Positions 43,001-45,267 of a stretch of 64,000 bases of DNA are shown piece after piece. The notes under the pieces are model-generated. The model saw only the letters and a program-made list of their open reading frames with translations, did no database searches and had not been told where the DNA came from. The stretch is from contig NC_087249.1 of the NCBI RefSeq assembly GCF_037042905.1, forward strand, positions 40,176,001-40,240,000. Direction: 5' to 3'. The stretch is from Lytechinus pictus. Lineage: Eukaryota. Each line of letters starts with the position of its first letter. Position 1 is the first letter of the stretch. The translations under genes were made by a program, and so were the position numbers.

Positions 43001-45267
43001 AAAAAACACGTCTCGCTAGCTAGCGCTAGGCCTCAATACAAACAGCGCCATCTATCATGTTTGAGCCTACAGTGAGTATAACAATGGCTGACATTTACTT
43101 ACTTGTTCCCTGGGTCCTGGTGACAAGGGTCTTGCCGATGTTACGGATGTTGAACATGGCCGGAGCTTTCACATCATACCATTCCTTCTTGGTGAATGGA
43201 TCCAGACTGTGCACAAAAGAAAGTAATTGAAAAAAAATACATTCACTTACCAGGCAAAATTATATTTTCGGGGGCTAACTTTTACAACCTTAAAATAAAA
43301 AATCACCACCACCAAATCACCTACTGCCCAAGTACAGTTTTTTCCAGTAAATAAACCACATTTTCTCCCCCTCTTTATCATCTTGAAAAGTCGGGTGCGG
43401 TTTATTCAAATAAACATTAATTTCTCATTAGTGAGCTAACTAAACTTCTTCATTGTTGAACGTTCAAGAACCAAGAAACATATATCAAAATATTCAATAT
43501 AACTATTTGTTGGTTACTAAAACAGAGAGCAGATCTATATTTTGCAAAGCTACGAACCCCCTGTGCAAGAAAGCGTCTAGACACACAACTCCACATCAGA
43601 GAACACACCCCACAGTCGTCCCATTCCAAACCATTTCACAAAGGAACTATACTCTTGTGTGAAGAGAAAACAGTCTTGACCATTCACCGCCAACCGCCAT
43701 TGTTCATAAATTCTCATCATAGCCAACGTACATGTTCCACCTCTACACACAGACATTCACACACCAAGTCGAAGTCATGCGGGCTCCCATTCACTCATGT
43801 GTTTTAAAACTCCCCGCTTGTGCTCACGTGGACGGCTTGCCGCGAATTTGCATATGATGCAAATTAATTTGGGATTTACGCGCTCTACGTATGGCTTCGT
43901 TGTCAAGAAAATAGACGCGTACGCCATGCCTCTAGATTTCGCTTGTCTGCACAAAGGTATTTCCAAATTGATTTTGCATTGTGATCTTGTGTAATCAGCC
44001 CAAAACTGAGTGCACCATCGAAATCAGCGACCCCAGAAATACTTCAGTCCAGCTGGACAAGTTTGTAGCACCCTCGATCGCTGTGCTGTCGCAAGGGTAA
44101 GCAGCAATTTCGTATTATCTTTATTTCATAATATAAAAGAGAACTTGTCCTTAAAAGCATATTATAGGAAATTTAATTCCCTTTCGAACCATATCATTAT
44201 CATTTTTATTTAAAAAAAATGATCAGATCACAATTTTCAGAGCTTTCAAAGGGGACCTTGTATTCAAAAAGTGTGTGCCATTTTCGCTTCAGTACACGAC
44301 ACGCAATGACATGCGTGTATTATGGCCAGAGAGCTCCCGCAGCTATCACTGAGGCTATAGTTTGATCGTCCAGACACCCTACTGTGCAATCATGACACAA
44401 AGATTGTTCTATAAATACACATTCAAGTACCGTATACAAAATAATTTCAATACGAAGAAATCAGACTTTTCAAATTGAAAAAGCCTGGATTTTGAGTGAC
44501 ACTACACAAAAGTAACATATGGAGTTGTATGGCTTCCCGAAAGCCGATTCCGCGTTTGCTCCCTTTTCATTCCCTTGATCCTTTGAGGTGACATACGCAC
44601 TAACGGCTAACGCGACAAACGCTATTTGCGATAAGGTCTAACGACAAGGTTATAGCGATTGGCGGACAGTCTGCAGAACTAGCTAACTGCCCTTTAGCGA
44701 TGCATTGCGGTTCTGATTAGCAATAGTCTAGGCCTATACCTTATTGGGAATGTTGGGACAATTTAATTTATGAAGTGCGCCCCCAACGTCAGGACATTAC
44801 TTTCACTGCACTGCAAAAATGCAGACAAAAAACCCTTTCAAGATTCACACAAACCGACTCACATTTCACTTATATTTCTTCCTTACGTTACACCATGTAC
44901 ACTGTTTCACGCTTAGACAAATACATCAATTTCGCTCTGCACTTCTCACGCAAAGACCATGATGCGGGCAGTTTTGTTCTAGGAAAATTTAGACACCGTG
45001 CGAGCGTGTCACAGTCACTCGCGTGCGATATATGCATTGACGACACACGTATTCCACAGCCACAGCTGTGCCCCGCAAACCTGTCGGGCACTGCCTACAA
45101 AATCCACAAAAATCTACACAATCCGTCAATTTCTTTAAAATAAAGTATATAATTCTTAAAGATAAATATATGGGTATTGTTTCCAAAATGATGATATATT
45201 CTTACACTTTTTTCTTGGAACCTTTTTTGCCTCCTTTCGAGAGGCGTTTATTCTTGCCCACCGCCAT
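37012..45267 (-). CDS. RPS3A: 40S ribosomal protein S3a (eS1), 6 exons, 265 aa
   Basis: Exons 45267-45206, 43206-43103, 42012-41825, 39069-38861, 38331-38222, 37136-37012, all GT-AG, 798 nt in total. Reads [85 protein letters not shown] at 36839..36834. Confidence 0.98.
37215..37344. mobile_element. PIF/Harbinger-like MITE, same family as 14092..14220
   Basis: Same body and TIRs; CAG on both sides. Confidence 0.85.
37519..38113. mobile_element. Kolobok-like MITE in RPS3A intron 5
   Basis: TTAA|aggggaatcca ... tggattcccct|TTAA. Confidence 0.85.
40047..40946 (-). mobile_element. 3' fragment of an L2/CR1-group LINE in RPS3A intron 3
   Basis: ORF 40883..40143 has [42 protein letters not shown]; (AAT)n tail. 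Confidence 0.9.
43549..43706 (+). pseudogene. inverted partial copy of RPS3A last exon/3'UTR inside RPS3A intron 1
   Basis: Matches the reverse complement of 36911..37043 with ~3 substitutions and one ~25-nt indel. Confidence 0.93.

What the first reader, a model, noticed from the sequence alone, without database searches (positions are those of the whole stretch)
43549..43706. RPS3A intron 1 carries an antisense copy of the gene's own stop codon and 3'UTR
Seen: 43549..43706 is the reverse complement of 36911..37043 (last ~10 codons, TAG and ~100 nt of 3'UTR) with only ~3 substitutions and one ~25-nt indel. It has no polyA tail and no obvious TSD. Because it is inverted, the RPS3A pre-mRNA could fold intron 1 onto its terminal exon as a ~130-bp duplex across 6.5 kb, or the excised intron could act as an antisense RNA to the mature mRNA. 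Inference: this is either a built-in autoregulatory, endo-siRNA or ADAR substrate in a highly expressed gene, or a recent templated insertion from DNA repair using the gene's own transcript or looped 3' end. The extra 25 nt may preserve an older or allelic form of the UTR.
Basis: partly seen in the sequence, partly recalled or inferred. Interest (0 to 1): 0.82.

Follow-up and report, generated by a model that had tools for sequence, protein, structure and literature searches.

The report
Young self-copied fragment in RPS3A intron
A sea-urchin ribosomal protein gene (RPS3A/eS1, Lytechinus pictus) carries in its first intron a real, recent, inverted 158-bp copy of its own last-exon end. The copy is missing from sister species and looks like a neutral repair or retro-copying scar, not a regulatory device.

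Summary
Window 43549-43706 (+) is an inverted copy of 36911-37043, which holds the last 10 codons, the TAG stop and about 100 nt of 3'UTR of a minus-strand RPS3A gene. The two differ by 3 mismatches and one 25-nt indel.

The spliced protein is identical to Lytechinus pictus eS1. I fetched the orthologous loci of L. variegatus, S. purpuratus and Diadema. All of them lack the intron copy, so it arose after the L. pictus/L. variegatus split.

The extra 26 nt are ancestral. They are present in the L. variegatus and S. purpuratus 3'UTRs and in a second, highly expressed L. pictus mRNA allele. The reference UTR carries a derived deletion.

Three of the four differences are derived in the UTR allele and only one in the copy, so the copy is young.

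- **Left junction:** a contig from a run labelled as the same species bridges it on a divergent haplotype, so this is not an assembly artefact.
- **Junction features:** no TSD, no poly(A), 1-nt overlap on one side, and a 2-nt filler next to a truncated repeat on the other.

Best reading: a neutral templated insertion, either a class-2 templated sequence insertion (TSI) or a reverse-transcriptase (RT) template switch. No evidence of function was found. The scan had not noted this before.

The parts
43549..43706 (+). Inverted intronic copy of the RPS3A last-exon fragment. It reads in mRNA sense on the + strand, so it is antisense within the minus-strand pre-mRNA.
   Evidence: Identical in L002 (L. 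pictus GCA_037042905.1). Absent from L001 and L003-L006.
43638..43663 (+). 26-nt segment present in the copy but missing from the reference 3'UTR. It is the ancestral UTR sequence.
   Evidence: Present in the L. variegatus and S. purpuratus 3'UTRs. Present in the organism-B mRNA contig and in a high-depth organism-A mRNA allele. Unique in the window.
36911..37043 (-). Source segment: the last 10 codons ([10 protein letters not shown]), the TAG stop (37014-37012) and the first ~100 nt of the 3'UTR of RPS3A.
43707..43708 (.). 2-nt filler (TA) between the RPS3A-derived segment and the truncated repeat. It is templated by neither.
   Evidence: (repeat-family contigs start aligning at 43709-43711)
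43709..44370 (.). Mid-copy repeat-family member, cut off at its left end exactly at the insertion.
   Evidence: depth 220-280 against ~25-45 single-copy in L. variegatus DNA. Contigs from three runs stop at 43709-43711 and run on with unlike sequence. Not present in the L. variegatus intron.
44381..44663 (.). High-copy repeat fragment. Depth rises rightward and stops at 44663, which suggests the 3' end of a 5'-truncated retroelement family lying on the + strand.
   Evidence: depth table (996, 2093, 2594, 1144, then 0) and loose ends before 44381
43207..45205 (-). RPS3A intron 1 (GT..AG). The L. pictus-specific block is ~43550-44730. The blocks conserved with L. variegatus are 43092-43549 and ~44730-45300.
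36815..37136 (-). RPS3A terminal exon. The CDS runs to 37012 and the AATAAA signal is at 36839-36834. The cleavage site is inferred.
   Evidence: the 3'UTR continuation is seen as a loose end of mRNA contigs
45206..45293 (-). RPS3A exon 1. It has a 5'TOP-like start CTTCCTCTTT at ~45293 and the ATG at 45267.

Best explanation
This is a young, L. pictus-specific templated insertion. A break in intron 1, at the edge of a retroelement-derived block, was sealed with a 158-nt DNA copy of the end of RPS3A's own message, in inverted orientation. I think the template was most likely a local RPS3A transcript copied by a reverse transcriptase. That could have happened either as a cDNA patch ligated by end joining (the class-2 templated sequence insertion type) or as a template jump by a retroelement RT at the 5' truncation point of the neighbouring repeat. 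The source was an ancestral-type, long-UTR allele. The reference haplotype's 3'UTR later acquired, or recombined onto, a 25-nt deletion and two substitutions. The insertion then persisted as a neutral intronic passenger. Shown: the copy is real, lineage-specific, young, made from an ancestral-form template, and its junctions lack a TSD and poly(A). Inferred: the RNA template, the RT step and neutrality. My confidence that it is a neutral templated insertion of some kind is about 0.8. The figure below is for the RNA-templated version.
For: The copy and its sharp borders are established. The copy is absent from the whole RPS3A locus plus 3 kb on each side in L. variegatus, S. purpuratus and three Diadema loci, while their 3'UTRs carry the 26-nt segment. 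Polarising with those outgroups, the copy keeps the ancestral state at 43592, at 43671 and at the indel, and has one derived change at 43565. L. pictus/L. variegatus intron homology resumes exactly at 43549, with a 1-nt overlap with the fragment end. On the other side a 2-nt filler abuts a repeat-family member that is cut off at 43709, while other family copies continue. There is no poly(A), no TSD and no other templated piece from the window. The fragment is purely exonic. I estimate that only about 2% of random 158-nt pieces of this 8.5-kb gene would be purely exonic (estimate from the exon lengths). That favours an RNA template over a DNA one. Repeat depth in L. variegatus DNA rises from ~220 at 43740 to ~2600 at 44500 and stops at 44663. 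This is the pattern of 5'-truncated non-LTR families, with the RPS3A piece in the same orientation at the 5' truncation point. The left junction was recovered on a divergent haplotype from a run labelled as the same species (X2 record 26). The features match the published description of class 2 TSIPs: no TSD or poly(A), microhomology or non-templated nucleotides, and RNA-derived patches (PMC5110952). Transcript RNA can template break repair (PMC12065846).
Against: No exon-exon junction lies inside the fragment, so an RNA origin is not proven. No empty-site allele was recovered. L. variegatus has 3.1 kb of its own transposable-element (TE) insertions at the same place, so target deletion and microhomology cannot be fully reconstructed. 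The class and orientation of the neighbouring repeat rest only on a depth gradient. It has no ORF, no poly(A) or simple-repeat tail and no Rfam or Pfam hit. It also looks more diverged from its family (~4-8%) than the RPS3A copy is from its source, which suggests two separate events rather than one chimeric insertion. That the fragment comes from the very gene it landed in shows only that the template was nearby. A DNA template 6.5 kb away satisfies that equally well.
Confidence: 0.5

Rival explanations
1. DNA-templated template switching during replication or break-induced repair (FoSTeS/MMBIR-like). A stalled or broken end in intron 1 invaded the gene's own 3' end, 6.5 kb away on the opposite strand. 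It copied about 158 nt and returned, leaving an inverted templated insertion. The outcome is neutral.
For: The template is nearby and inverted, as is typical for such events (established knowledge). The borders are sharp, there is no poly(A) or TSD, and a deletion or replacement of ancestral intron sequence may have accompanied the event.
Against: There is only 1 nt of overlap at one junction and a 2-nt non-templated filler at the other, rather than multi-nucleotide microhomology. A DNA template gives no reason for the piece to be purely exonic, which I estimate has an a priori chance of about 2%. No second templated segment from the surrounding 64 kb was found.
Confidence: 0.25
2. Gene-fragment capture by a mobile element. 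The neighbouring repeat acquired the RPS3A 3' fragment elsewhere or earlier (transduplication, or a chimeric retrotranscript that then spread), and the composite unit inserted into intron 1.
For: The fragment directly abuts a repeat-family member, and the whole ~1.17-kb block 43550-44730 is L. pictus-specific.
Against: Landing by chance in the donor gene itself is very unlikely: 8.5 kb in a genome that I recall, untested here, to be of the order of a gigabase. Other family copies continue with unrelated sequence where the RPS3A piece sits (loose end before 43709, which is absent from the window). L. variegatus DNA shows the fragment at single-copy depth, 39 against 25-45. No second copy exists in the window or the fetched loci.
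Confidence: 0.08
3. Functional inverted repeat. The intron-1 arm pairs with the 3'UTR in the pre-mRNA or in trans. It might feed ADAR or Dicer, tune RPS3A output, or bracket exons 2-5 to promote circular RNA.
For: The predicted duplex is 132 bp with a 26-nt bulge and a dG of -251 kcal/mol. Complementary repeats flanking exons are known to drive back-splicing, and long dsRNA is an ADAR substrate (established knowledge). The insertion is present on at least two haplotypes.
Against: It is absent from every other sea urchin examined, and the ribosomal protein itself is near-identical across them. Intron-flank RNA is at least 1000-fold rarer than the mRNA in the same run. Intron 1 is transcribed 6.5 kb before the 3'UTR. 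Only the canonical exon1-exon2 joint was seen. There is no Rfam family and no proper C/D snoRNA architecture.
Confidence: 0.07
4. Assembly artefact, such as a chimeric read or a mis-join that placed cDNA-like sequence in the intron.
For: L002 is the same assembly as the window, so it gives no independent check.
Against: A contig from another run labelled as the same species bridges the left junction, with 137 nt of unique intron and 47 nt of the copy, on a haplotype with its own SNPs and a 111-nt indel (X2 record 26). The copy also carries ancestral bases that the reference mRNA allele lacks. A mis-join of this haplotype's own sequence would not produce that.
Confidence: 0.02

Closest known systems
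Class 2 templated sequence insertions / TSIPs (Onozawa & Aplan; PMC5110952)
   Same: A short (~10^2 nt) stretch copied from elsewhere is inserted at a break. It has no target-site duplication and no poly(A), shows end-joining signs (1-nt overlap, 2-nt filler), is heritable and is lineage- or population-specific. The donor is transcribed exonic sequence.
   Different: The donor is the recipient gene itself, 6.5 kb away, in antisense orientation. This is a sea urchin rather than human. An RNA intermediate is not proven, and presence/absence polymorphism within the species has not yet been shown.
Chimeric retrotranscripts formed by LINE RT template switching (Buzdin-type bipartite/tripartite chimeras; from my own knowledge, not checked in a paper here)
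   Same: A fragment of an abundant cellular RNA is fused, in the same orientation and with a couple of extra nucleotides, to the 5' truncation point of a retroelement copy.
   Different: No TSD, poly(A) or 3' tail could be identified. The repeat's class and orientation are only inferred. The repeat appears older than the RPS3A piece.
Processed retrocopies / class 1 TSIPs (LINE endonuclease-mediated)
   Same: The material derives from an mRNA 3' region.
   Different: The fragment stops ~70 nt before the AATAAA signal. It has no poly(A) tail, no TSD and no TTTT/A-type site evidence.
Intronic complementary repeats that drive exon circularisation, or ADAR-edited inverted repeats
   Same: The repeat is long and near-perfect, with one arm in an upstream intron and the other downstream of internal exons.
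   Different: The downstream arm lies in the terminal exon rather than in an intron. The arms are not TE-derived. No RNA evidence and no conservation were found.

Membership tests
Class 2 templated sequence insertion (TSI/TSIP) | The insert is templated from another genomic or transcribed location | tested here: met
   98% identity to 36911-37043, with E = 2e-41 and 2e-16
Class 2 templated sequence insertion (TSI/TSIP) | No target-site duplication, no poly(A) tract and no cryptic poly(A) signal at the insert end | tested here: met
   Flanks read ...TTTTGCAAA|insert|TAAATTCTC. No direct repeat and no A-run. The insert ends ~70 nt before the AATAAA signal.
Class 2 templated sequence insertion (TSI/TSIP) | End-joining signatures: microhomology, non-templated nucleotides, microdeletion | tested here: inconclusive
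   1-nt overlap at 43549 relative to L. variegatus. 2-nt filler TA at 43707-43708. Deletion cannot be reconstructed, because L. variegatus has its own 3.1-kb TE block there.
Class 2 templated sequence insertion (TSI/TSIP) | RNA (reverse-transcribed) origin | not testable with these tools
   The fragment lies inside one exon and has no splice junction. Only the indirect argument that it is purely exonic is available.
Class 2 templated sequence insertion (TSI/TSIP) | Presence/absence polymorphism or lineage specificity | tested here: met
   Absent from L. variegatus, S. purpuratus and Diadema loci. Present on two L. pictus haplotypes. Within-species absence alleles were not searched.
LINE-mediated processed retrocopy (class 1) | A 3' end at the mRNA poly(A) site with an A-tail, plus a TSD | tested here: not met
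RT template-switch chimeric retrotranscript | The cellular-RNA part is fused in the same orientation to a 5'-truncated non-LTR element that has a 3' tail and flanking TSD | tested here: inconclusive
   Truncation at 43709 and the rightward depth gradient fit. No tail, TSD, ORF or family identification was obtained.
Box C/D snoRNA hosted in an RP-gene intron | C (RUGAUGA) and D (CUGA) boxes brought together by a terminal stem, plus an Rfam family match | tested here: not met
   ATGATGA lies at 43719-43713 and CTGA at 43599-43596 on the gene strand. However, there are no complementary terminal bases and the spacing is ~123 nt (read). There are no Rfam hits at the gathering threshold or at E<=5.
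Conserved regulatory inverted repeat (autoregulation, circRNA or ADAR substrate) | Conservation of the intronic arm in related species | tested here: not met
Conserved regulatory inverted repeat (autoregulation, circRNA or ADAR substrate) | RNA evidence: editing, small RNAs, back-splice junctions | not tested
   The single read-laying run covered 42900-45400 only. Contigs drop rare variants and carry no strand information.

The most novel reading that the evidence does not exclude
The self-derived antisense insert may be more than a scar. It could be a newly born cis-regulatory element in L. pictus. Pairing of intron 1 with the 3'UTR (132 bp, -251 kcal/mol) might promote exon 2-5 circularisation, or make dsRNA that marks RPS3A transcripts for editing or silencing. 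That would be a natural example of a highly expressed gene acquiring self-antisense through transcript-templated repair.
Probability: 0.06. Interest if true: 0.6.

Novelty: new member of a known kind. Interest (0 to 1): 0.3.

Why it matters
This is a clean, datable natural example of a gene patched with a copy of its own message outside mammals. The donor, the recipient, the outgroups and a segregating donor allele are all in hand. That makes it a useful case for work on transcript-templated or RT-mediated break repair in the germline. It is also a ready-made presence/absence marker for L. pictus populations. It probably does not matter for RPS3A biology.

Tried and rejected
- **Rfam:** I scanned 34-48 kb at the gathering threshold and intron 1 at E<=5. 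Nothing relevant appeared; the only hit was a chance lncRNA match at 13.8 bits.
- **tRNA and tandem-repeat scans of intron 1:** no SINE head and no tail.
- **snoRNA reading:** a C box lies just outside the copy and a D box inside it. I rejected this because there is no terminal stem and no Rfam support.
- **26-nt segment and contig loose end:** I searched the window for the 26-nt segment and for the 30-nt contig loose end. The first occurs only in the copy and the second is absent.
- **Other templated pieces:** a sensitive blastn of 43250-43900 and of the repeat blocks against the window and all fetched loci found none.
- **Exact-protein look-ups of junction-spanning ORFs:** nothing on record.
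- **Pfam on the 246-aa intron-3 ORF:** no hit.
- **Bacterial promoter/terminator scan:** uninformative for a eukaryote.
- **Earlier-findings look-ups** by place, words and sequence: nothing bearing on this.
- **Full-length RPS3A look-up:** I did not type the spliced protein into a tool. I reached the family through a profile of exon references on a scaffold hit.
- **First alignments:** alignments A2 and A3 mis-placed short exons and were discarded in favour of A4.

Full report
**Observation.**
Window 43549-43706 on the + strand is an inverted copy of 36911-37043. The repeat finder gives two arms of 89 nt and 43 nt, each 98% complementary. Local blastn gives E = 2e-41 and 2e-16. A global alignment shows three mismatches (43565 G/A, 43592 C/A, 43671 C/G). 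It also shows 26 nt (43638-43663) where the source has one base. Homology stops abruptly at both ends. There is no A-tail and no flanking direct repeat. No other part of 43250-43900 is copied from anywhere in the 64-kb window.

**Gene context.**
The minus strand carries an intact six-exon gene, with all introns GT..AG:

- Exon 1: 45267-45206 (from the ATG)
- Exon 2: 43206-43103
- Exon 3: 42012-41825
- Exon 4: 39069-38861
- Exon 5: 38331-38222
- Exon 6: 37136-37012

It encodes a 265-aa ribosomal protein S3A/eS1. The AATAAA signal lies at 36839-36834. Spliced RNA contigs confirm intron 1 as 43207-45205. The copy therefore sits in intron 1, about 345 nt upstream of exon 2, and is antisense to the gene. 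The source is the last 10 codons, the TAG stop and the first ~100 nt of the 3'UTR. It ends about 70 nt before the poly(A) signal.

**Whose genome.**
I aligned exon references onto a scaffold hit to build a profile. With that profile I found the sea-urchin eS1 cluster. The window's spliced protein is identical to the Lytechinus pictus entry. It differs by one residue from L. variegatus. I then fetched the annotated loci with introns and 3-kb flanks:

- L. variegatus (L001)
- L. pictus (L002, the same sequence as the window)
- S. purpuratus (L003)
- Three Diadema loci (L004-L006)

**Comparative result.**
Only L. pictus has the intronic copy. L. variegatus and S. purpuratus match the 158-nt query only at their own last exon. 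They match it over its full length, including the 26-nt segment, at 94.9% and 81% identity. Diadema matches only the coding end.

A four-way alignment polarises the differences:

- At 43592, 43671 and the indel, the copy has the ancestral state and the reference L. pictus 3'UTR is derived.
- Only 43565 (A to G in mRNA sense) is derived in the copy.

The copy is therefore young, with 1 change in 158 nt. By comparison there are about 8 differences between the copy and the L. variegatus UTR. The copy was made from an ancestral-type, long-UTR allele.

**Read evidence.**
The run codes fit organism A = L. pictus and organism B = L. variegatus, but the names are coded, so this is an inference. It rests on two matches:

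- An organism-A intron contig (X1 record 5) is identical to the window over 206 nt.
- The organism-B mRNA and DNA contigs differ from the copy at the same positions as the L. variegatus locus L001 does (43650, 43651, 43672, 43676).

An organism-B mRNA contig covers all of 43549-43706, including the 26 nt. Its overhangs are RPS3A coding sequence on one side and the distal 3'UTR on the other.

An organism-A RNA run holds both UTR forms at very high depth. The short form reads TGAGAAAAGAGTC directly after 43637. The long form carries the 26 nt plus an extra AGTT. The indel is therefore a segregating allele in the expressed gene.

A low-depth contig from a second organism-A run (X2 record 26) joins unique intron sequence (43412-43548) to the first 47 nt of the copy. 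That haplotype has its own substitutions and a 111-nt indel. This rules out an assembly artefact and shows that the insertion is not private to one haplotype.

In organism-B DNA the fragment has single-copy depth (39, against 25-45 for neighbouring unique sequence). This agrees with the absence of a second copy there.

In the organism-A RNA run, intron-flank contigs have depth about 3, against 3,000-30,000 for mRNA contigs. Contig depths are a poor measure of expression, so this is only a rough ratio. Only the canonical exon1-exon2 joint was seen.

**Junction anatomy.**
Comparing intron 1 between the two Lytechinus species gives two conserved blocks: 45300 to ~44730, and 43549 to 43092. Between them L. 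pictus has ~1.17 kb of its own sequence. L. variegatus has 3.1 kb of its own, which is mostly transposable elements.

Homology to L. variegatus resumes exactly at 43549. This base is shared with the end of the RPS3A fragment, giving a 1-nt overlap.

On the other side, two bases (TA, 43707-43708) separate the fragment from a repeat-family member at 43709-44370. In L. variegatus DNA this family is about 6-8 times single-copy depth. Contigs from three runs all stop aligning at 43709-43711 and continue with unrelated sequence. The local copy is therefore cut off exactly at the insertion. That continuing sequence is absent from the window.

Further right, depth climbs to ~2600 and ends at 44663. 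This gradient is typical of 5'-truncated non-LTR retroelement families with their 3' end on the right. I could not classify the repeat: it has no ORF, no tail, no TSD, and no Rfam or earlier-note match.

**Mechanism.**
The features match published class 2 templated sequence insertions. These are short inserts with no TSD or poly(A) and with end-joining marks, thought to be cDNA patches at double-strand breaks (PMC5110952). Transcript RNA is known to template break repair (PMC12065846).

Two arguments bear on the template:

- The fragment comes from the very gene it landed in. For an unlinked template this would be extremely unlikely, so the template was physically local. It was either nascent or just-made RPS3A RNA, or the DNA 6.5 kb away.
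- The fragment is purely exonic. I estimate that only about 2% of random 158-nt pieces of this gene would be purely exonic (from the exon lengths). This favours RNA.

The position at the truncated 5' side of a retroelement-like block suggests an RT template jump as one route. However, the repeat looks older than the RPS3A piece: 4-8% from its relatives against about 1% for the copy. A separate later break and patch is therefore at least as likely.

I put about 0.8 on a neutral, lineage-specific templated insertion. Of that, about 0.5 is RNA-templated and about 0.25 DNA-templated replicative switching.

**Function.**
The pre-mRNA could in principle form a 132-bp duplex with a 26-nt bulge (dG -251 kcal/mol). 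Several points argue against a role:

- The arm is absent in all other urchins examined, although the protein and much of the UTR are conserved.
- Intron 1 is made and removed long before the 3'UTR is transcribed.
- Intron RNA is scarce relative to the mRNA.

I could not test editing, small RNAs or exon5>exon2 back-splicing. I leave about 6-7% for a functional reading.

**Verdict.**
The regulatory interpretation is not. This is a new member of a known kind (a templated insertion). It is a neat case because donor, recipient, outgroups and donor alleles are all defined, but it is ordinary in its likely consequence.

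Noticed in passing
window 36911-36931 (minus strand; copied at 43686-43706); L001 ~13050-13072; L003 ~9975-9997; Diadema 3'UTRs in L004-L006: The 3'UTR motif GCCA[A/G]CCGCCAUUGUU is conserved from Lytechinus and Strongylocentrotus to Diadema in otherwise diverged UTRs. It is the near reverse complement (14/16 to 15/18 nt) of the gene's own start-codon region, CUAAC[U/C]AUGGCGGUGGGC. Duplex energy between the 5' leader plus start and the 3'UTR is lower than for shuffled UTRs (z = -2.4 to -3.8) in the camarodont urchins (Lytechinus, Strongylocentrotus). 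In Diadema it is only -0.9 to -1.5. This could be 5'-3' pairing, a Kozak-like or SOX-like (AACAATG) site, or chance.
   Followed up: partly
window 36954 / 43638-43663, and the RNA contigs: The RPS3A 3'UTR is polymorphic in L. pictus. There is a short allele (25-nt deletion plus two linked substitutions, the reference form). There is also a long allele (the ancestral 26 nt plus an extra AGTT after the base matching 43646). Both are highly expressed.
   Followed up: partly
window 43301-43411: A 111-nt presence/absence difference in intron 1 between the reference and a second L. pictus haplotype (contig X2 record 26 skips it).
   Followed up: no
window 42900-43095: A very high-copy repeat, with depth 10^4-6x10^4 in L. 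variegatus DNA contigs. It includes a C15 run (42978-42992) and lies immediately downstream of exon 2 in intron 2.
   Followed up: no
window 40143-40883 (minus): A 246-aa open reading frame in intron 3, in gene orientation, that looks transposon-derived. It has no Pfam hit, so its identity is unverified.
   Followed up: partly
window 37210-37349 and 14130-14224: A MITE-like element with 31-nt terminal inverted repeats in the last RPS3A intron, ~75 nt upstream of the terminal exon. A related copy (87%) lies 23 kb away.
   Followed up: no
window 43824-43870: Inside the mid-copy repeat there is a CACGTG E-box followed by a palindromic double octamer-like motif, ATTTGCATATGATGCAAAT.
   Followed up: no
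L001 3557-6656 (L. variegatus intron 1): L. variegatus carries 3.1 kb of its own nested transposable elements at the same intron position where L. pictus has its 1.17-kb specific block. They are relatives of window 944-1635 and 30287-30781, and of elements near the Diadema RPS3A genes. The site seems to be a turnover hotspot.
   Followed up: partly
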